DNA of 64,000 bases from Glycera tridactyla (taxonomy: Eukaryota). The notes under the pieces were generated by a model. It ran no database searches, was not told the DNA's origin, and saw nothing but the letters and a program-made list of their open reading frames with translations. Below are positions 3,239 through 44,449 of this stretch, one piece after another. The stretch lies in assembly GCA_965644265.1 (NCBI GenBank), contig OZ286463.1, positions 17,112,001 to 17,176,000 on the forward strand, read 5' to 3'. Made by a program: the position numbers and the translations under genes. Each line of letters starts with the position of its first letter. The stretch's first letter is position 1.

Positions 3239-4217
3239 TTTTTCCCTTAATTTAGAGTGAGAATTGAGACATTTTCATGATGATTTGACCACTCTTCTAC
3301 TGGCCTTGGTCAGGTGATGGATATTGCCGAGGAGATATCATCTCAATTTTAGTTCCAAAGTAAGGGAAAAATACTTCGATCATGGATCATCTTGGAACCA
3401 GGAACAACATTTCTCTGTAGGAGGGATCGGCAGGATTGGAATTTTGATATGATGATAACCAGAGAGATATGTCAAAAGGATATTCCAAGCTCATATATGT
3501 CAACCATTGAGATCTTGGAATAATGACTTTACTCATTAGATTTTTCTTACCATTCTCTTGCAAATACAGACCTTGCTACTAATTGAATCTAGTGCCATTA
3601 CAGTGGAACCCGATTGAGAGACCCCATCCTATGGGACACCTCTTTCTTGGTCCAGACTTTGTGTCTGACATACTGTATAATGCCAAATATACGCACAGTG
3701 CACAAAGGCATTGTAAAGTCCCGTGTGCGTCTATTTGGAACCGAATTCGACCAGGTGAAGACTGACAGACCTTTTGTATTTATCACGAAATATATAATTA
3801 TTCGGGGTTGACATGAGTTCCACTGGTCATCGCAGGTGCTGTGGACGACTTAGAATTACCGGGTGTGCGTTCAAATGGGCATGGGCATGCATACGGCAAT
3901 ATACGGTAGTCAAATATACCTCTGACAAGAGGCCACCTCTTTTGAGAGACAACATTTTGATGTCATTTATTCTCTAGTCACAAGTTTAATTGTACTATTT
4001 TTGTTCATCAGAGGATGACATCTATGCGTCTCACATTATTCCATTAGATTCTTTGCCCTTCCTACCATCTATATATATAATGGGTTATATGGCCGAAGTA
4101 ATATAGCACAAAATATTTGATGGGCTGACCTTGGTCAAGGTAATAACATTGTCCAGACCTGATGGCTGCGGGATAAAACTGCCAGCTCCTGATGCTGGGT
4201 ATATATACACACATATA

Positions 4218-4220
<3 letters not shown>

Positions 4221-4261
<41 letters not shown>
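4221..4261. repeat. (TA)n microsatellite
   Basis: About 20 TA units. Confidence 0.95.
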
Positions 4262-4265
<4 letters not shown>

Positions 4266-5009
4266 TGGAAGCCCTATGTACACTCAGCGCAATATATATG
4301 AGCTGCGGCGGTTTGACGTCACTCATTTTGATGGATGCCATTCAGCTTTCCGTGTAGGCTGCAAATTACTGAGTCTGGTTAGCAAAAAAATGACAGTCAT
4401 TGCTGATATTTGAACAGACATACTTGCTAATTGTAGAGATGAAAATTGCGAAAATTATCCATACTTCATCTGAGGTACATATGTGAAAAAATGATAGTGG
4501 CTATACAATTTTATTTTTCAAAAGATGCTTGTCTTTTGTCAGGTATACTATTTAATCATGAAATCCTGATCTAATTTTCGATAAAAGATTTCAGGCCTGG
4601 AAAATTCCAGGGCTAGCCATCTCAATCTTGTTATACATACTCTTCTAGGCTAAGGCAAGATACCTTTATTCTTGAATTTCAAAGTCACTGAGTGCAAAAA
4701 ATTCAAAACTGTTTCCCGGCAATAACTTAAAAAGTTTCAGGACTAGCCTTTTCAAACTTGGTTTTCAGACTCTCCTAGGCTTTCAAGGTCATTGAGTGTG
4801 AAAGAGTAATTGGTATTAAACATGCACTCAGTGGGGCATTTGCACTCACTGACTGCATCAGGTTTTTGTCAAGAGAATTTCTCTTTTTTTTAGCTTCTAC
4901 ATTTTCTTGATTATCAACACTGATGCTATTTTGACTGGGTCTCACAAAATCTCATGTTGTTTCTTGTGGTTTCTGCTTTCAGGTAGGGAGTGAGTGAGGC
5001 GGGTTCGCC

Positions 5010-5223
5010 ATGCCGGTACTCAGCATGGATACCTTGCTGCGGCTACGGCGAGCGGCGGCGGACGATGAGTCGGCCACGGAGGCTGGACCCGTGGAATCCG
5101 ACGTCACAGTGGGAGGAGAAGCAGAAGCAGGAGCAGCGTTGGGAACGAGTGAAACCCCTGAGGGAGAAAGCACGATGAACAAGGTTGGCGATGCCATCAT
5201 GCACGAACTTGAGAAGTTGCCGA
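5010..5223 (+). CDS. Syt1: Syt1 first coding exon (luminal domain, MPVLSMDTLLRLRRAAA...HELEKLP)
   Basis: Acceptor ttctgctttcag ends at 4982, so a non-coding exon lies further upstream (not located). ATG at 5010. Phase-1 donor A|GTAAGT at 5223/5224 is in frame with both TM exons. Confidence 0.88.
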
Positions 5224-6627
5224 GTAAGTACACGTTTTGAGTTCACGAAATTACCTCGATTTCAAAGAATTCAGTTCACAAATCCTGCAGGAGTTGGTGA
5301 TATCTAGGCAAAACATTAAACAAGAAAGCAGCCAGTTGCAAGAAAAATTGTGGATATACACATGCTGACAGAGTAGATCAGGGAGACTAAGCTGATTATG
5401 GTGAGCCTATATCATTTCAGCATTTAAATCCTTTTCGAGGGAATACATCGAACCCTTTTCATGTTGAGATGAACATGGTAATGGGCTCTGTGAGAAGTGG
5501 GAAGACTAGACAGTAGCAGATGCACTATTCCCCCTCACTTTCAAATTGACACAAACCTTATTGATTTCCTTGCCTCTGATTTGAAGTAGCCCCCTGCTTT
5601 GAAATTGACACAAACCTTGTTGATTTCTCCAACTTGAGGCGCTGCCTTGGGCAGCCACTCAACCAGAACCTCTTCAGAAGGTCCTTCTCTGTACATTTCA
5701 TGAAAGTCAATCACTGACCACTTTGCTTCCCTCTAAACATCTGCCAATTCAACTCTGACTATGTAAACCACATGCTGGATATAGTTCAAAACAACAACTG
5801 CTATCTTCCAGAAGGCTCAAATATGGAAGAATGTTGGCAAATGGCGTTTTGTCTGAGCTACCTTATTGGTGACTATGTTGTCATTTTCACTCGACTCCTG
5901 TCGGGTAGGTTGAATCCAAGATGGCAGCCTTTTTGAAATTGGCAATTTATTATTCTTGATTACAGACACTCATCACTTACTAGCAACAGTGATCACGAAA
6001 TCATGATTTGCTCATATAATGCCCACCTGAGCGGTGTTCATAGGGCTCAACACTAAGATTTTTGGTGCACTTGCCTGAACACAAATTTTACTTGCCCGGG
6101 TAATAGGGCAACCCTTGATATCAAGCTCTGATTCATGTAGATTTTCAAGAATGTGATTAGATGGCTTCTTGCAATGACATTCAGATGACCCTGAGGAAGC
6201 CTATTGTGATGATGTATCATTTCGAGGCATTGATCAAATTCTGGATGTAAAACCGAAGCACTGGTTTGAAAACAAATGGCCAGCATTCATGAGCTATGAC
6301 TGAGCATGGAACAGGTCATTATAATTCAAATTCAGAAGGCTTTATATTCGCCGTATCACTAGTTTTAATATAGGCACTATACAGAAAATAAAGCATCTAT
6401 TCATATACAGTGCATTTAGACGTATTTCCTTCAATGTCTCTGGCCCTAACACAATTTAACCACAGTGAAAACATGGCTCATGGACGACTTTTCGTCACAG
6501 TGGTCAGATCATTTTCACAACATAAACTATAAATTCAGCAATGTGATAAACAACTGCTTGATTCTTTCACTAGAGGATGAAATTCCTACCTCTTCACACT
6601 CCTATGATTCATGCTTCACATCGAAAC

Positions 6628-6736
6628 AGTATTCAGAAGTGAATAGGTTCGAAATTGTAGGTTTTGGAAGAGTATTCAGAAGTGAATAGGCTCGAAATTG
6701 TAGGTTTTGGAAGAGTATTCAGAAGGGAATAGACTC
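6628..6736. repeat. 43-bp tandem repeat, about 2.5 copies
   Basis: agtattcagaagtgaatagg.tcgaaattgtaggttttggaag. Confidence 0.9.
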
Positions 6737-6847
6737 ATAGTTGGACTTCCTTCAAGTGAACACAATTGTTGGCTGGTGACGGTTTTCATCATTGATGTGT
6801 TTTGATAATCATCGTTGTGTGCTTGTTGTGTTACCTTCCATTTCTAG

Positions 6848-7008
6848 TACCACTCTGGGGAATCATCGCCATTGGAGTGGTCATTCTGCTCTTGTTCCTC
6901 ATCTGCTGCATTTGCATCTGCAAGAAATGCTGCAAAAAGAAGAAGTGGAAAGAAAAAGTCAAGAAGGGAGTTGACGTCAAAGGTCTCAAGTTAGGGGACA
7001 AGGGCGGG
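6848..7008 (+). CDS. Syt1: Syt1 transmembrane exon A (alternative): IPLWGIIAIGVVILLLFLICCICICKKCCKKKKWKEKVKKGVDVKGLKLGDKGG
   Basis: Acceptor ccttccatttctag, open frame, hydrophobic helix plus Cys cluster plus polybasic stretch. Phase-0 donor GG|GTAGGT. 161 nt; clearly paralogous to exon B. Confidence 0.8.
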
Positions 7009-7106
7009 GTAGGTTCGAACCAGTGAGGTGTTACACGTCTTTTCTACTCTCCGTTTTAAACTTTGCCATTTTTATCTTGGCTATTTTTATTTTCCTTTAT
7101 CTTTAG

Positions 7107-7279
7107 TACCGATGTGGGCAATTGTCATGATAGCCATTGTGGCCATCCTGCTCGTACTCTGCTGTTGCTTTTGCATCTGCAAGAAACTGTGCAAAAAGAA
7201 GAAATGGAAGGACAAGGTCAAGAAGGGCGCTGTTGACCTTAAGAGCGTCAAGTTGGGAGGCCAGGCTTTCAAGGAAAAG
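7107..7279 (+). CDS. Syt1: Syt1 transmembrane exon B (alternative): IPMWAIVMIAIVAILLVLCCCFCICKKLCKKKKWKDKVKKGAVDLKSVKLGGQAFKEK
   Basis: Acceptor ttcctttatctttag, donor AAG|GTAGGA, 173 nt. Ends in the canonical invertebrate Syt1 GAVDLKSV..G..FKEK motif that precedes VQP. Confidence 0.93.
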
Positions 7280-7649
7280 GTAGGAGGATCCTAGGTGTGC
7301 TTTGTCGCCCTTATCCAGTCAACCAGAAATCACCTCAAATCAGCCATGATCGAGATAAAAATGAAACAGAAAACCATTGAGAAAGAACACAAAATGATTA
7401 TAAAGATAAGATACGTTGTTTTTTTACTTTCATAGAACCATTGTGCAGAATTTGAGAATCCTGCTGTTATCGGAGCAAAATATCACTTTTACAATCTCAA
7501 TAAGATATTTACCAAGAGGTATCGCATTTTATTCAAACCAGGTGGTGTATTCAATCATCAAAATGCAGACTTAATCATATAACTGACAAATAGTGTGTTC
7601 AAGGTTCATTAAGTGATCCAACAAGAATTGACCATCTTACACTATCTTG

Positions 7650-8680
7650 ATCATTGTCAACTGTCAACTTACTCGTCTAATTGACTATTAACAAACTTTC
7701 CTGAGCATCATTCGCTCATGAGTACAATGAGCATATCTCTACTGACAACTTTCTTGTCGAATTTCTGCCATCTCACCGTAAATTCTGGTTAAAACAGCAC
7801 AAATCATATGCTGTTATGTTAACAACAAACTCCTTTACACCTTTGTGAAGATGGCATGTTACTGAGAAACTTGGCTGAAAACTTCAAACACAGAAATGCC
7901 ATCCACTATGATTCTGGAGTAGCACCTACTCTTTCAGGCCAAAATTCTTGCATTTTACAGGTAATGTCTCTCTTGAAAATGAAGATTTTTCTATTCCATT
8001 GCAAATAATGGCTATGTTACTGCTTGAAATGGGCACTGCTACTATTTTCATCCTTCAGAGGTTGTCATCTATCCGAACAGCAGATCTGTCATGATACCAG
8101 GCTTTAATTTCAATAAATCTGACTAAAAACAGCACTGATGATTATCATTCACTTATGACATGAACTCTGACAATGGCTGAATTTGGACTGATTCATGGAT
8201 GGCTTGTGAGCCTTTGCTCACAGACCTCTGTATGCTTGCCAGAGTGTGAAGAAGCATGAGTGTGAGAGTAAGCCTATTTGCTGTTAGCCAAGTCATTTTG
8301 AAATCATGCTCGCCGGACCACCATGATATTGTTGCTCTCTGTGTAGTTCATCTGAGATATCCTGATTTTATTTCTTGTGCTCAGTCATGTCCGTGTTCCA
8401 GTGTCGTGCCTACACCAAGTGTTTATTCATGGCATCCTGCATCTGTTTGTGATTGCACAGTTGTTTTCCAAGTGCATTTGTACAACACTGCATCTCCTGT
8501 TATCACTTATGTCAGTTTCAAAGAGGGAACGGGCCGAGAAATCGGTTCAAAGTTTCACTTCTTCAGCAGACCTTTTCGTTGGAACTCTGATCAGTCTTTT
8601 CAGCTCAACCACTGTTGGTACGTCAACCTTTGGCCAATTTGATGGCATCTGTTAGGTTTCCTTTGCAGCACTTCACCATT
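7650..8680 (-). pseudogene. Decayed LINE RT relic (L2/CR1-like)
   Basis: NFEPISRPVPSLKL (like NYRPISLLP), QMHLENN and RHDTGT (like RHSTET), with frameshifts. Confidence 0.33.
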
Positions 8681-9399
8681 TAGCATTTGACATTTCCCTG
8701 TATATAAGGAGGAAGAAAGATGGCTAAATGATATTGTATCCTCTCTTAAAGATGTCAAGGTTCACACTGTCTGCTATTAGGAGTTGTTGCTATCGGAATC
8801 TAGTCGCACCATGATTTGGGGGTGTTTTCACTTGTCCTCGATGTGCAAGTAGTATGTGTGTATGTGCACATGAAGTCAGTTGCGGCACCTTGTTCGTCTT
8901 TTACTGCTTCTTTCTTATATGGCTTACTAACATAACACTGCCTCTTGTGACTTGTGTCTTATGTTTCTATATTGGGCATTTTCCCCTCATTGACATAGGT
9001 TGGTCATCCCACTTTTGTCACTGTTTACATCATTGGGTTTAGAATGTAGTTATTTCTTCAAGATTGTATGAAAGTTGTCCTTTGCTCCATATGAAGAAAT
9101 TTATGTCTCGAGTACATGAGATCATATCAGAAGATGGAACACACATTTGTAGCTTGTAGGCTTAGTCTCAGAGAACTTACTTGTCAAACCGAATATAATA
9201 AAAGAAAACGTCTGTTTGATCATTTTCATGAAGAGTGTATGCTGTTCATTTGAGCTTGCGAAAACATGTGGACATAATTTGTATGTTTAGGAAAAAGGTC
9301 ATGGGTAAGAAATATGTCTATTCTACATGATCTGAATATTGATAGTGGAAGATGTGCAATCATGTGTAGCTCGAATTCGTTCAAGTACAGTCAAGCTTC

Positions 9400-13108: not shown

Positions 13109-13275
13109 NNNNNNNNNNNNNNNNNNNNNNNNNNNNNNNNNNNNNNNNNNNNNNNNNNNNNNNNNNNNNNNNNNNNNNNNNNNNNNNNNNNNNNNNNNNN
13201 NNNNNNNNNNNNNNNNNNNNNNNNNNNNNNNNNNNNNNNNNNNNNNNNNNNNNNNNNNNNNNNNNNNNNNNNNNN
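13109..13275. other. Assembly gap (167 N)
   Basis: Run of N. Confidence 1.
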
Positions 13276-15232: not shown

Positions 15233-15358
15233 GTGCAGCCTGAACTGGACGATCTAGAGCCCAATATGGAGGACAATGAAGATGCTGAAAGTGTCAAGTC
15301 AGAGGTCAAACTTGGCAAGCTCCAGTTCTCATTGGACTACGATTTTCAGAAAGGAGAG
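15233..15358 (+). CDS. Syt1: Syt1 linker/C2A-start exon: VQPELDDLEPNMEDNEDAESVKSEVKLGKLQFSLDYDFQKGE
   Basis: Acceptor tgaactttgcag, donor GAG|GTGAGT, 126 nt, phase 0-0. Missed by the ORF track on the + strand. Confidence 0.95.
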
Positions 15359-15551: not shown

Positions 15552-15719
15552 TTGACAGTTGGAGTCATCCAAGCTGCAGATCTGCCAGGAATGGACATGT
15601 CTGGAACGTCTGACCCCTACGTCAAAGTCTACCTGATGCCAGATAAGAAGAAAAAGTTTGAGACGAAAGTGCATCGCAAGACGCTGAACCCAGTCTTCAA
15701 TGAAACTTTCATGTTTAAG
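15552..15719 (+). CDS. Syt1: Syt1 C2A exon: [56 protein letters not shown]
   Basis: tag| acceptor, AAG|GTAATG donor, 168 nt, canonical C2A loop-1 aspartates. Confidence 0.98.
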
Positions 15720-16667
15720 GTAATGACATTTTATTTGCTGCAGAAGTTTTCACAATGATTGAGCTGTGGTGGACACTACAGGATTGAGTACACATGTTCT
15801 TGTCTCCCTTTGCAAAATAGATAATATTGGTCGAGTTTGACATGGAACACACCTGTAACTGTCTTGGGTGCTTTATTTGATCGTGAATGCTTTTTTAGGG
15901 TGCCAAAGTGGGAACCACTACAATTACATCCACTATATATACTTAAATCTCCACAGCTGTAGAAGCCTGTTTCCAAAATATGCCTGAGTAATAGGTGCAT
16001 TATTTTAGTAACAGCAGGTATTCCTTTTAGCATTTGCATAGTAACATACATGCGTAGTAACATACATGTACATGTATTCTCATTTCTCACCTGGGGAAAC
16101 TGCTACTTTTACCACTTCTACCTCTTCCCATTGTTGTTCTTTGGTGCCATATGTAGTATATACTCATTGCATTAATATAGAATTTTCCTGCAGATAGGGA
16201 ACCCAATATTAATAATACAATGAGTGGATACTTCATGTATGTCCCAGGAATAACAATATGGAGAGGTGGGACATAAAGCAGGTCAATTGGGATTTTTGAG
16301 AAACCATCCAGATGCTTTTTGTTTGATATTGAGGTCCATATTCATTCGAGGAAATATTATACAGGGATGTGATTCTTCAGTGGATCCACAGATTTTTTTT
16401 TTATCTCAAATGGAGCCATCCATGTATCTGACAGAAAAGATTACTGATTATTGTGGCTTTCATATTGAGAAAATCGAGCCAGAATAAGTAGAGATGGCGT
16501 ATGTATGGAGTAATAGTAGCTATCATTTAGCAGTTGTTGAGTTTCTCGGTGCTGCAAATATCGATGAAAATGCCCCTGGTCAGGTTTTCAGGGTTTTTGG
16601 TTGTTAGCTAATCGTGTCCCTGAATATACCATGGAGACATTGCAAAAGTACCGTTTCTCTTCTGCAG

Positions 16668-16844
16668 AATGTACCATATGCTGAACTGGGAACGAAAACA
16701 TTGACATTTGCAATCTACGATTTTGACCGCTTCTCCAAACACGACCAAATCGGCTTGGTGCAAGTACCAATGAACTCGGTGGATCTTGGGCGAGTTGTTG
16801 AGGAATGGCGAGATCTGACCAGTCCAGAAGCGGACAATGAAAAG
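16668..16844 (+). CDS. Syt1: Syt1 C2A exon: [59 protein letters not shown]
   Basis: tttctcttctgcag| acceptor, AAG|GTGAGT donor, 177 nt, [10 protein letters not shown] calcium-binding loop. Confidence 0.98.
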
Positions 16845-34035: not shown

Positions 34036-34203
<168 letters not shown>

Positions 34204-38540: not shown

Positions 38541-38674
38541 ATCCCTACGTCAAAATAGCTCTTTATCAGGGGACCAAGCGACTGAAGAAGAAGAAAACGA
38601 CGATAAAGAAGCGTACCCTGAATCCTTACTACAATGAATCCTTTACCTTTGAATGTCCATTTGAACAGATTCAG
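38541..38674 (+). CDS. Syt1: Syt1 C2B alternative exon A: [45 protein letters not shown]
   Basis: cttcccttatattctgcacag| acceptor, CAG|GTAGCA donor, 134 nt, phase 1-0, intact frame. Confidence 0.9.
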
Positions 38675-39464
38675 GTAGCACTGACTTCTCCTGACATCCT
38701 TAAGCTTCTACTAACAATTCTGGTACTAGTGGTTGATGCTGAAGTGAGGGATGGGGAAAGGTTGCCTGGGATACCAATTGTGAAATGCATTGCTATGGAA
38801 CGCAAAAATATCAACATTCCTTCACGCCTCTGCTTAGCACCCAATCGATGACTGAAATTGTTCCTCAACTAGAAGAAATATCCGTTCTCTACAGCACAGT
38901 GTTACAGGAACACTGTTTGGATATCCCTGTCTGGTGTATTCACATTTCAGTATTAAAGTATATGAATATCATTTAGAGGTGCAAGACTGGGATTTGGTGT
39001 TTTAGTGTTACCTAAGACAAACACTACAACACCCTGTGATCGGCAGAGTATCACTTTGCAATTCATCCATAAAATCAAAAAATATTCTATGGTATGCCTT
39101 GAATCTTCAGAAAAATGTTGCCATATCATACACATATCTAGTTACAGCATGTGTTCTTTTGGATATATTTGCATAGCATATTGGCATGACATGAAAGTCA
39201 GATGCTGGTGTATTTTCAGGATTTCGACTGACAGCTACACATAGAAAATATGAATTATCTGGCATACCTGGCATGAAAGAAGTCATAGAGAAAACAAGAA
39301 AGTTGATATTTTTGCCTGGTTACATGTAGATGTTGGCTGCAGTGGTTGAACATGAATGGAGAGTTTTCACTATTTGGCTGCTGTGACCTGGACCTTTGAC
39401 GATGAGGAATATTTGTGATGTTGGAGATTATTGAGCATTTGTACAAAAATAACTAATTACAACA

Positions 39465-39570
39465 TAGAGTAAAACCTGCTACAGTGAAATCCTGTCTACA
39501 GTGAAATCCTGTCTACAGTGAAAAGAAAAATCTGGCCCGTGATTTTTCACTATAGACAGGTTTTACTCTA
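39465..39570. mobile_element. 106-bp MITE between the two C2B exons
   Basis: Perfect TIR TAGAGTAAAACCTG / CAGGTTTTACTCTA with internal ctacagtgaaa repeats. Confidence 0.8.
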
Positions 39571-40446
39571 TATTATTTCTTGAAAATAATCCCTAACAAA
39601 ATTGTTCATGCAAAATTCAACACTTGCCAACATGGTGCATGTTTCTTTTCTATATATTGGGATCCTTGTGCTTTACAATGCATGGAAATGCAACATAACT
39701 CGCAGGCTTCCAACAGAATTCAGCCGGTTAACCACTTTCATAACAAATGTCTGGATAGGGTCTGATGCCAAAGTTTACTGCTCACTTGGCAAAATGACCA
39801 GACACAGATTTTATTTGCCTGTGGTCATTATTTGAGCCCTAGAGTCAAGCTTTGCTTATTTTGTATACCAAAGATCCTCAATAGGGATGCGTCTTACAAT
39901 GAAAAGCTCTTCAGAAATTTGACCAAGTGACTTGGAATATTTTGGGTGAAATGGCTTGGATTGCTGTATTGGAAATCTGTGAGACTATTTTTTCTGTTGC
40001 ACTTGTGTATTTGGGTGGCAGCATATGGGAAGGTTACTAATAACAATTAGTGCTCTTCTCAAAGAGATGTGGGTGATGTCACAAGAAGAATTGAATAGTA
40101 ATCGGTAAATTTCAAATTCAGCAACAAAATATTTTTTTTTTAAATTTGGAAAAAAAATTGAAAAAAAGTAAATATGACATATCATATGGTCGCTGAAGCA
40201 CATTTTGGAAGTTATTTTTGGATTATACAAAATCTGATTCATCCAAAGAATATTCAGCTCTATTGTGACTTTTTCTTTCCCCCTACAGTTTTGGGATATA
40301 TTTCTGTAGTGATGAATCCGTGGTGGTTGGATCAGTTGCCTTGTCAGTGGACCTACACGCTCGCATACTCATACAGATGTTAATCATTGATGACTCTAAC
40401 CAGCTTTGCTCTCTGTCTTTCTCTCCCTTCTGCCTGCTCCTCTCAG

Positions 40447-40580
40447 ATCCCTATGTTAAGCTTTCTTTGATGCTTAATGGCAAGCGTATTAAGAAGAAGA
40501 AGACTACAATCAAGAAGTGCACACTGAATCCTTACTATAACGAGTCATTCTCGTTTGAGGTTCCGTTTGAACAGATCCAG
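40447..40580 (+). CDS. Syt1: Syt1 C2B alternative exon B: [45 protein letters not shown]
   Basis: Long polypyrimidine tract ending ctctcag|, CAG|GTACTG donor, 134 nt, phase 1-0, same length as exon A. Confidence 0.95.
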
Positions 40581-44263: not shown

Positions 44264-44449
44264 AAAGTGACCGCCATCGTCACGGTGGTTGACTACGATC
44301 GTATCGGAACATCTGAACCCATCGGACGTGTTGTTTTGGGTTGTAACGCCACTGGAACTGAGTTGCGTCACTGGAGCGACATGTTAGCCAACCCCCGACG
44401 CCCTGTTGCCCAATGGCACACTCTACAAGAGATGCCCGAGAAGAACTAG
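44264..44449 (+). CDS. Syt1: Syt1 last coding exon: [61 protein letters not shown]
   Basis: ttctccctttacag| acceptor, DYDRIG loop, WHTL motif, TAG stop at 44447-44449. Confidence 0.98.

What the first reader, a model, noticed from the sequence alone, without database searches (positions are those of the whole stretch)
6848..7279. Synaptotagmin-1 has two tandem, swappable transmembrane exons
Seen in sequence: two paralogous exons 98 nt apart each encode a full TM helix, Cys cluster and polybasic juxtamembrane segment. Both start in phase 1 and end in phase 0, and both have intact AG/GT sites. Joining A to B reads TAC CGA TGT GGG CAA TTG TCA TGA (early stop), so they can only be used one at a time. 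Exon A differs functionally: an extra Cys (KKCC versus KKLC), a juxtamembrane segment 4 aa shorter, KGLK instead of KSVK (no Ser), and loss of the FKEK motif. Established: this region carries Syt1 palmitoylation, oligomerisation and lipid contacts. Inference: membrane-anchor switching of the fast Ca2+ sensor. I know mutually exclusive C2B exons from other invertebrates but am not aware of a TM-exon pair; novelty is unverified without a search.
Basis: partly seen in the sequence, partly recalled or inferred. Interest (0 to 1): 0.82.

Follow-up and report, generated by a model that had tools for sequence, protein, structure and literature searches.

The report
Two swappable membrane-anchor exons in synaptotagmin-1
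A probable annelid worm's gene for the fast calcium sensor of neurotransmitter release has two alternative, both-transcribed versions of the exon for its membrane anchor, used one at a time, a splice switch I found described for no other synaptotagmin-1 gene.

Summary
Exon A (6848-7008, 161 nt) and exon B (7107-7279, 173 nt) lie 98 nt apart in a complete synaptotagmin-1 gene. They are 62-66% identical in protein, share intron phases and have AG/GT sites. Both lengths are 2 mod 3, so using both or neither breaks the frame.

Transcript contigs from four samples of one study join the first coding exon to A and to B at the predicted sites, at comparable depth. An 832-nt scaffold from a close relative holds both exons in tandem, with mostly silent changes. 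A is therefore not a dead duplicate.

B is the canonical, bilaterian-wide form and A is the derived copy. Two named annelids (Lamellibrachia, Paralvinella), a nemertean (Lineus), two unnamed contigs and about 120 Syt1 proteins show one TM exon only. The pair looks lineage-restricted. A 46-genome synaptotagmin survey and my paper searches describe no such pair.

- Both exons have six Cys; one is relocated, not added.
- A joins 15239, not 15233, so it skips the known 'VQ' insert, while B keeps it.

This apparent coupling rests on contigs only. The functional difference (palmitoylation pattern, helix surface, distal linker) is inferred. Earlier notes on this window already flagged the C2B pair, not this one.

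The parts
4983..5223 (+). First coding exon of Syt1. The ATG is at 5010 and the exon encodes the lumenal N-terminus. It ends in phase 1 with donor GTAAGT at 5224.
   Evidence: Contigs cover 4977-5223 and then run 4 more letters (TACC), which are shared by A and B, before the graph branches.
6803..6847 (+). Intron block upstream of exon A, UG-rich then pyrimidine-rich, ending in the acceptor AG. It is conserved in the relative while the intron further upstream is not alignable.
   Evidence: Alignment A2.
6848..7008 (+). Exon A, the derived TM / Cys-cluster / polybasic exon. It is 161 nt (53 full codons) and its tail ends in KGLKLGDKGG.
   Evidence: A 216-nt contig covers it with 0 mismatches in all 4 runs, with joint 5223>6848 (GT..AG). 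It is intact in L004 at 160-318 with 7 silent and 3 replacement changes.
7009..7106 (+). Intron of 98 nt between A and B. Its first 20 nt and last roughly 60 nt (a long pyrimidine tract) are conserved in the relative. No unusual fold was found.
   Evidence: z = +1.29.
7107..7279 (+). Exon B, the canonical TM / Cys-cluster / polybasic exon. It is 173 nt (57 full codons) and its tail reads AVDLKSVKLGGQAFKEK.
   Evidence: A 234-nt contig covers it in all 4 runs, with joint 5223>7107. It is 98% identical in L004. It resembles the single TM exon of other bilaterians.
15233..15238 (+). GTGCAG between two tandem acceptor AGs. This is the 'VQ' wobble insert. It is present after exon B and absent after exon A in the contigs.
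   Evidence: sequence; the loose end after 7008 starts CCTGAACTGG, which is position 15239. The B contig aligns to 7281 and carries 33 more letters (GT + GCAG + 29). PMC2668829 describes the VQ wobble site.
15239..15358 (+). Rest of the linker exon, shared by both isoforms, leading into C2A.
15552..16844 (+). C2A exons at 15552-15719 and 16668-16844.
   Evidence: Pfam C2 hits with E 1.7e-20 and 2.3e-07. tblastn against annelid Syt1.
38541..40580 (+). Second mutually exclusive pair in the same gene, the C2B exons at 38541-38674 and 40447-40580. This is the already known kind; it is listed for context only.
   Evidence: The same pair is seen in Lamellibrachia and Paralvinella.

Best explanation
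An old tandem duplication of the exon for the Syt1 membrane anchor created a mutually exclusive pair. The exon encodes the TM helix, the palmoylated-type Cys cluster and the lysine-rich juxtamembrane start. Shown: the spliceosome joins the first coding exon to either A or B. Each choice gives a complete Syt1 protein, and both choices are made at comparable levels in four samples. Shown from sequence: taking both or neither shifts the frame, so such products are truncated. Inferred: those products are removed by nonsense-mediated decay. B is the ancestral form. A is a diverged copy that keeps helix length, six Cys and the KKKKWK.KVKKG core. It changes 11 of the first 28 aligned residues (helix, Cys cluster and the residue after KK). 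It moves one Cys from the membrane side to the cytosolic side of KK. It replaces the conserved ..KSV..[YF]KEK tail with a shorter Gly-rich one. In the contigs, A is joined to the distal acceptor (no VQ) and B to the proximal one (with VQ), so the two isoforms differ over a continuous stretch from helix to linker. Inferred function: the isoforms differ in palmitoylation pattern, helix packing and linker behaviour. That would affect vesicle sorting or self-association of the Ca2+ sensor in different neurons or states.
For: Anatomy and frame.
Transcripts: joints 5223>6848 have contig depth 72/23/56/30 and joints 5223>7107 have depth 26/34/47/72, both with GT..AG ends, in runs X1-X4. The intron bins 6444-6811 and 7548-7731 have zero depth, so these are spliced RNA. 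The exon-1 contig ends with the 4 letters common to A and B, so no retained path skips both.
Selection: between A and B, pS is 0.70, pN is 0.23 and dN/dS is about 0.14. Against relative L004, A has 7 silent and 3 replacement changes (binomial P 0.001) and B has 4 silent and 1 replacement (P 0.008). Splice sites and flanking intron blocks are conserved while distant intron is unalignable.
B is canonical: it matches the single TM exon of annelids, molluscs, nemerteans, a hemichordate and a sea urchin far better than A does.
Coupling: the contig geometry is 26+161+29 letters for A and 26+173+35 letters for B, identical in all four runs, and the printed loose end after 7008 confirms it.
Relevance of the region: the juxtamembrane lysine cluster governs Syt1 self-association and phase separation (PMC8694047, PMC10766989).
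Against: All RNA evidence is from one study and from assembled contigs, which drop minor variants. Low-level A+B inclusion, A with VQ or B without VQ cannot be excluded. Depth is only a rough measure. The runs are labelled RNA only as a guess, although the GT..AG joints argue for RNA. There is no protein-level or functional data. The basic core thought to drive oligomerisation is nearly the same in A and B (net charge about +10 against +11), so the linker effect may be small. The pair was found only in this species and one close relative. This genome seems rich in duplicated exon arrays generally (earlier notes), so some pairs could be near-neutral.
Confidence: 0.82

Rival explanations
1. Exon A is a dead or decaying duplicate, and its inclusion is splicing noise.
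For: A is the more diverged copy and lacks the tail motif conserved across bilaterians. No A-type isoform was found in protein databases.
Against: The frame and splice sites are intact. A-containing contig depth equals or exceeds that of B in two of four runs. Silent changes are in excess against the relative (P 0.001). dN/dS is about 0.14 against B. Intron blocks around A are conserved.
Confidence: 0.03
2. Both exons are used, but the proteins are functionally equivalent. On this view the duplication persists through regulatory subfunctionalisation: each copy has its own splicing control in different cells or stages, and there is no anchor 'switch' in the biochemical sense.
For: Helix length, Cys number and the lysine core are the same in both. 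The A:B depth ratio varies about 7-fold between samples (2.8 to 0.41), which is compatible with regulation. The blocks upstream of each exon are conserved but different.
Against: The A peptide itself is under purifying selection, even though it is 38% different from B. The conserved ..KSV..[YF]KEK tail is specifically lost. The VQ choice also differs between the isoforms. Together these point to a protein-level difference.
Confidence: 0.13
3. The apparent A/no-VQ and B/with-VQ coupling is an artefact of contig cleaning. On this view all four combinations exist and the acceptor choice is independent of the TM exon.
For: Logan contigs pop small bubbles and keep the deeper path. A 6-nt indel is exactly such a bubble, and the tool warns that contigs show presence, not absence.
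Against: Independent choice would make the same acceptor the major one behind both exons. Instead, opposite paths were kept behind A and B in all four runs.
Confidence: 0.3
4. Mutual exclusion is enforced mechanically rather than by frame and decay. The cause would be steric hindrance in the 98-nt intron (alpha-tropomyosin type) or competing RNA pairing (Dscam type).
For: The intron between A and B is short. It has a long conserved pyrimidine tract of about 45 nt upstream of B, as in exons with distant branch points. No A>B joint was among those listed.
Against: An intron of 98 nt leaves 60-76 nt between the A donor and plausible UUUAU branch sites, which is above the usual minimum (my reading). 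The fold of the region is no better than shuffles (z +1.29). Only the inter-exon intron was folded, so the test is partial.
Confidence: 0.25

Closest known systems
Syt1 C2B mutually exclusive exons (Aplysia; C. elegans snt-1; also present in this window)
   Same: It is the same gene and the same device: a tandem duplicated exon with one copy used per mRNA. The pair is present here at 38541-38674 and 40447-40580, and in Lamellibrachia and Paralvinella. It is reviewed in PMC2823689 and PMC2668829.
   Different: That pair recodes the centre of the C2B domain and is widespread. The pair studied here recodes the TM helix, Cys cluster and linker start, and was found only in this lineage.
Syt1 'VQ' wobble splicing at a tandem acceptor (Aplysia SytI / SytIVQ; insects, squid)
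   Same: The identical site and letters (GTGCAG) occur here at 15233-15238. Both forms are seen in the contigs.
   Different: In the literature it is treated as an independent choice. Here it appears linked to which TM exon lies upstream. That link is an inference from contigs.
SNAP-25 exon 5a/5b
   Same: It is an ancient duplicated exon pair in a core exocytosis protein. The exons are mutually exclusive and differ by a few residues, including the arrangement of the palmitoylated Cys cluster (PMC2581893, PMC3104942).
   Different: SNAP-25 has no TM helix. That pair is a vertebrate feature and its isoforms have tested phenotypes. The pair here is untested.
Alternative splicing of the synaptotagmin-7 juxtamembrane linker
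   Same: Splicing changes the linker between TM and C2A and thereby changes oligomerisation or condensate behaviour (PMC13598225).
   Different: Syt7 uses cassette exons that lengthen the linker. The TM helix and Cys cluster are not exchanged.
TM-exon skipping in synaptotagmins (mammalian Syt5, 6, 8, 9 and others; Ciona Syt16)
   Same: Alternative splicing acts on the TM-encoding exon (PMC2823689).
   Different: Skipping removes the anchor. Here, skipping would break the frame, and one anchor is replaced by another.
Lineus longissimus Syt1 isoform X3 (NCBI model)
   Same: It replaces the same conserved distal tail (..AVDLKSVQLLGNSYKEK) with another short peptide.
   Different: It uses an inner donor plus a 57-nt mini-exon. 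The TM helix and Cys cluster stay the same, and the exon is not duplicated.

Membership tests
Synaptotagmin-1 orthologue | N-terminal single TM helix followed by a Cys cluster and a lysine-rich linker | tested here: met
   Both exon A and exon B encode it.
Synaptotagmin-1 orthologue | Tandem C2A and C2B domains | tested here: met
   The C2A exons hit Pfam C2 (E 1.7e-20 and 2.3e-07). The C2B exons align at 77-100% identity to annelid Syt1.
Synaptotagmin-1 orthologue | Best similarity is to proteins named synaptotagmin-1, over the full length | tested here: met
   The assembled ORFs are 76-81% identical over about 430 aa to Syt1 of Platynereis and other lophotrochozoans. Paralogue trees were not built.
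Synaptotagmin-1 orthologue | Family-typical splice features: VQ tandem acceptor and C2B exon pair | tested here: met
Mutually exclusive exon pair from tandem exon duplication | Adjacent, homologous exons with the same phases and own splice sites | tested here: met
Mutually exclusive exon pair from tandem exon duplication | Transcripts contain one or the other | tested here: met
   Joints 5223>6848 and 5223>7107 occur in 4 of 4 runs, and each exon contig runs on into the linker exon.
Mutually exclusive exon pair from tandem exon duplication | Transcripts with both or neither exon are absent or unproductive | tested here: inconclusive
   Both or neither gives premature stops. No such path was kept in the contig graph, but contigs cannot show absence and 3 joints were not printed.
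Mutually exclusive exon pair from tandem exon duplication | Both copies maintained by selection | tested here: met
   The counts are small and come from one relative.
Steric-hindrance type of mutual exclusion (alpha-tropomyosin exons 2/3) | Donor-to-branch-point distance too short for splicing | tested here: inconclusive
   The intron is 98 nt and the branch point is unknown. Likely sites leave 60-76 nt.
Competing-RNA-structure type (Dscam docking/selector) | Conserved complementary intron elements | tested here: inconclusive
   The inter-exon intron fold is not better than shuffles. Other introns were not searched, and only two sequences are available for covariation.
Palmitoyl-cluster-rearranging exon pair (works like SNAP-25 5a/5b) | The isoforms differ in palmitoylation or membrane targeting | not testable with these tools
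   Only the moved Cys position is shown.

The most novel reading that the evidence does not exclude
The TM-exon choice and the 6-nt 'VQ' tandem-acceptor choice, about 8 kb downstream, are coordinated within single transcripts: A goes without VQ and B goes with VQ. The gene would then make two co-adapted anchor-plus-linker modules rather than four free combinations. This would be a natural case of long-range coupling between a mutually exclusive exon and a wobble acceptor. It would also suggest that the VQ dipeptide, which changes synaptic plasticity in Aplysia, works together with the conserved ..KSV..[YF]KEK tail that only B carries.
Probability: 0.45. Interest if true: 0.7.

Novelty: new variant of a known kind. 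Interest (0 to 1): 0.55.

Why it matters
Syt1 is the main fast Ca2+ sensor for transmitter release. Its TM domain, palmitoylated Cys cluster and juxtamembrane linker have recently been tied to sorting, self-association and phase separation. They have been studied almost only with artificial mutants.

Here nature provides two versions of exactly this module in one gene, both expressed and both kept by selection. That offers a ready-made comparison of what the anchor contributes. It also shows that the distal linker tail is a repeated target of isoform evolution, reached by different routes in this worm and in Lineus. If the link to the VQ acceptor is real, it is also a compact system for studying coordinated splice choices.

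The limits are clear. The organism is a non-model annelid, the pair is lineage-restricted, and function is untested.

Tried and rejected
1. Word search with the exon-A open frame found no candidates. Word search with the TM region of transcript P0183 found only itself and one other protein. No A-type protein is in the database.
2. A metagenome scan with the A/B profile gave 600 pattern hits, none confirmed.
3. Genomic look-ups for Capitella and Owenia Syt1 were not on record.
4. An exon tree grouped A with P0032/P0080 (support 94/80, only 59 columns). I rejected this as orthology. In contig L001 that exon is the only TM exon and is followed after 1.2 kb by the linker exon of a more divergent Syt gene. 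This looks like convergence or long-branch attraction.
5. P0183 scored as A-like, but its nearest genomic relative (L007) has a single TM exon, so it is probably that species' only form.
6. P0002, a gene model with two TM stretches, has two copies that are 100% identical in protein, 9 kb apart (1.6 kb of surrounding DNA is 95% identical). The second copy lies just past a 500-N gap among repeats. I treated it as an assembly or very recent duplication, not an exon pair.
7. The fold of the inter-exon intron was unremarkable.
8. Pfam hits of the TM exons (EphA2_TM, Comm and others) were below cut-off and reflect generic TM composition.

Full report
**What is there.**
The window carries a complete synaptotagmin-1 gene on the + strand.
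- The first coding exon has its ATG at 5010 and ends at 5223 in phase 1.
- The linker exon is 15233/15239-15358.
- The C2A exons are 15552-15719 and 16668-16844, and hit Pfam C2.
- A C2B exon lies at 34081-34198.
- A duplicated C2B exon pair lies at 38541-38674 and 40447-40580.
- The last exon ends at 44449.

Between the first coding exon and the linker exon lie exon A (6848-7008, 161 nt) and exon B (7107-7279, 173 nt), 98 nt apart. Both follow a pyrimidine tract and AG, precede GTAGG, begin in phase 1 and end in phase 0.

Their peptides are 62-66% identical. In the 64-kb window each matches only the other (E 1e-21; next best hit E above 0.01). Both lengths are 2 mod 3. Including both gives a stop after seven codons of B, and skipping both also gives stops. 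With A or B alone the whole gene reads open: 431 aa with B and VQ, 425 aa with A and no VQ. These ORFs are 76-81% identical to annelid and other lophotrochozoan Syt1.

**Are both used?**
Four runs (one study, four samples, coded organism) held about 17-18% of the words of 4900-7400, which is roughly the exonic share. Laid on 3500-9000, their contigs show joints 5223>6848 and 5223>7107, both bounded by GT..AG, in all four runs.
- Contig depths for A are 72/23/56/30.
- Contig depths for B are 26/34/47/72.
- The intron bins 6444-6811 and 7548-7731 have zero depth.

The material is therefore spliced RNA, and both exons are used at similar levels. The A:B ratio ranges from about 2.8 to 0.41. Depth of contigs is only a rough guide. 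The contig for the first coding exon runs 4 letters (TACC) past 5223. These letters are common to A and B, so no retained path skips both.

The A contig is 216 letters in every run: 26 from exon 1, 161 from A, and 29 more. The printed loose end after 7008 begins CCTGAACTGG, which is position 15239.

The B contig is 234 letters in every run: 26, then 173, then 35. It aligns two letters past 7279 (GT). This fits GTGCAG followed by the same 29 letters.

So A is joined to the distal AG and B to the proximal AG of the tandem acceptor. The six letters GTGCAG encode the 'VQ' insert. That insert is known from Aplysia SytI and is conserved as wobble splicing in insects and molluscs (PMC2668829). Contigs keep the major path of small bubbles, so this shows opposite preferences, not strict coupling.

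**Is A maintained?**
Between A and B, silent sites are saturated (pS 0.70) while pN is 0.23, giving dN/dS of about 0.14. The flanking introns share no similarity. The duplication is therefore old.

An 832-nt metagenome scaffold (L004) from a close relative is 92% identical over 495 nt. It holds both exons in the same order with the same splice sites.
- A has 7 silent and 3 conservative replacement changes (binomial P 0.001 against neutral expectation).
- B has 4 silent and 1 replacement change (P 0.008).
- Distant intron is unalignable.
- About 45 nt upstream of A, the first 20 nt after the A donor, and about 60 nt upstream of B are conserved.

This rules out a dead duplicate.

**Which copy is ancestral, and how widespread is the pair?**
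A profile of A and B searched against 1.84 billion representative proteins, followed by a word search with a full-length annelid Syt1, gave about 120 Syt1 proteins. They come from annelids, molluscs, nemerteans, a phoronid, hemichordates and echinoderms.

All carry a B-like exon ending in ..AVDLKSVQ.LG.[SA]YKEK. No species had two isoforms that differ in the TM exon. B is therefore canonical and A is derived.

Genomic loci show a single TM exon between exon 1 and the linker exon in these cases:
- Lamellibrachia satsuma
- Paralvinella palmiformis
- Lineus longissimus

The unnamed annelid-like contig L007 holds a single TM exon, with none in the 10 kb upstream of it and none before the linker exon; its exon 1 was not found. 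L001 likewise shows a single TM exon, with no second copy in the 3.6 kb upstream or before the linker exon.

The C2B pair is present in Lamellibrachia and Paralvinella. Both A and B share the lineage-specific core KKKKWK.KVKKG. This fits a duplication inside this lineage, or later exchange between the copies. The pair is thus lineage-restricted as far as I could see. The genome's exact taxon is not known to me; earlier notes call it a probable annelid.

**What differs between the isoforms.**
- Helix length is equal.
- 11 of the first 28 aligned residues (helix, Cys cluster and the residue after KK) differ. For example, WGIIAIGVV in A corresponds to WAIVMIAIV in B.
- Each has six Cys, but one is moved from the membrane-side start of the cluster (B) to just after KK (A).
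- The lysine core is the same, and net charge is similar.
- A lacks the Ser and the [YF]KEK motif of the conserved tail.
- A is 4 residues shorter, or 6 with the missing VQ.

**How it most likely works.**
- Shown: either/or splicing from exon 1 occurs, both products are complete ORFs, and both copies are under selection.
- Inferred: double or zero inclusion is removed by nonsense-mediated decay. A mechanical block is possible but not needed, because the intron is 98 nt and the fold is not special (z +1.29).
- Inferred: the different conserved intron blocks upstream of A (UG-rich) and B (long pyrimidine tract) are the handles for cell-specific factors.
- Inferred, from work on the Syt1 juxtamembrane lysine cluster and linker (PMC8694047, PMC10766989) and on Syt7 linker splicing (PMC13598225): the isoforms differ in palmitoylation pattern, helix packing and linker behaviour, and so in sorting or self-association.

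**Comparison with what is known.**
Craxton's survey of 46 metazoan genomes lists three alternatively coded regions of invertebrate Syt1: the TM-C2A linker, the C2A-C2B linker and the centre of C2B. It lists mutually exclusive exons only for C2 domains, and it lists TM-exon skipping in other synaptotagmins (PMC2823689). My five searches on synaptotagmin splicing found no description of a duplicated TM exon in Syt1.

The nearest analogue in logic is SNAP-25 exon 5a/5b, which rearranges a palmitoylated Cys cluster (PMC2581893). From my own knowledge, not checked here, syntaxin genes such as C. elegans unc-64 also swap C-terminal anchors by alternative exons.

I file this as a new variant of a known kind. 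The gene and the device are known; the domain affected and the apparent link to the VQ acceptor are not.

**Verdict.**
The functional switch is plausible but untested.

Interest is moderate. It is a natural two-allele-like experiment on the least understood part of a heavily studied protein. However, it occurs in a non-model worm whose genome seems generally rich in duplicated exon arrays.

Noticed in passing
window 15233-15238: This is the tandem acceptor encoding the known 'VQ' insert of Syt1. In the contigs it is skipped after exon A and kept after exon B, in all four runs.
   Followed up: partly
window 38541-38674 and 40447-40580: A second mutually exclusive pair in the same gene recodes the centre of C2B. 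The same pair is present in Lamellibrachia (L006 22339 / 23663) and Paralvinella (L008 20621 / 21897).
   Followed up: partly
window 3868-4051: RNA contig depth is 2,000-2,700 in all four runs, with dozens of different flanks at 3907-3950. This is a short dispersed repeat present in many transcripts, about 1 kb upstream of the first coding exon. Smaller peaks lie at 4604-4787 and 7916-8099.
   Followed up: no
window 7012-7021: GGTTCGAACC, a perfect 10-nt palindrome, lies right after the exon A donor. It sits inside the 20 nt that are identical in the relative L004.
   Followed up: no
L009 7532 and 8830-8886 (Lineus longissimus): NCBI isoform X3 replaces the conserved distal juxtamembrane tail through an inner donor plus a 57-nt mini-exon. 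This is a different genomic route to changing the same segment that exon A changes.
   Followed up: partly
L003 (metatranscriptome contig, protein P0004): This transcript from a fairly close relative shares the KWKDK core. It goes straight from ..GGVDLK to VQPDL, so it lacks the 12-residue conserved tail. It may be a third way to a tail-less Syt1.
   Followed up: no
L010 8514-8693 and 17526-17705: A gene model (P0002) from another animal has two copies of the Syt TM exon that are 100% identical in protein, 9 kb apart; the surrounding 1.6 kb of DNA is 95% identical. The second copy lies just past a 500-N gap, among repeats. It is probably an assembly or very recent duplication.
   Followed up: partly
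window 13109-13275: A run of 167 N lies inside the long intron between exon B and the linker exon.
   Followed up: no
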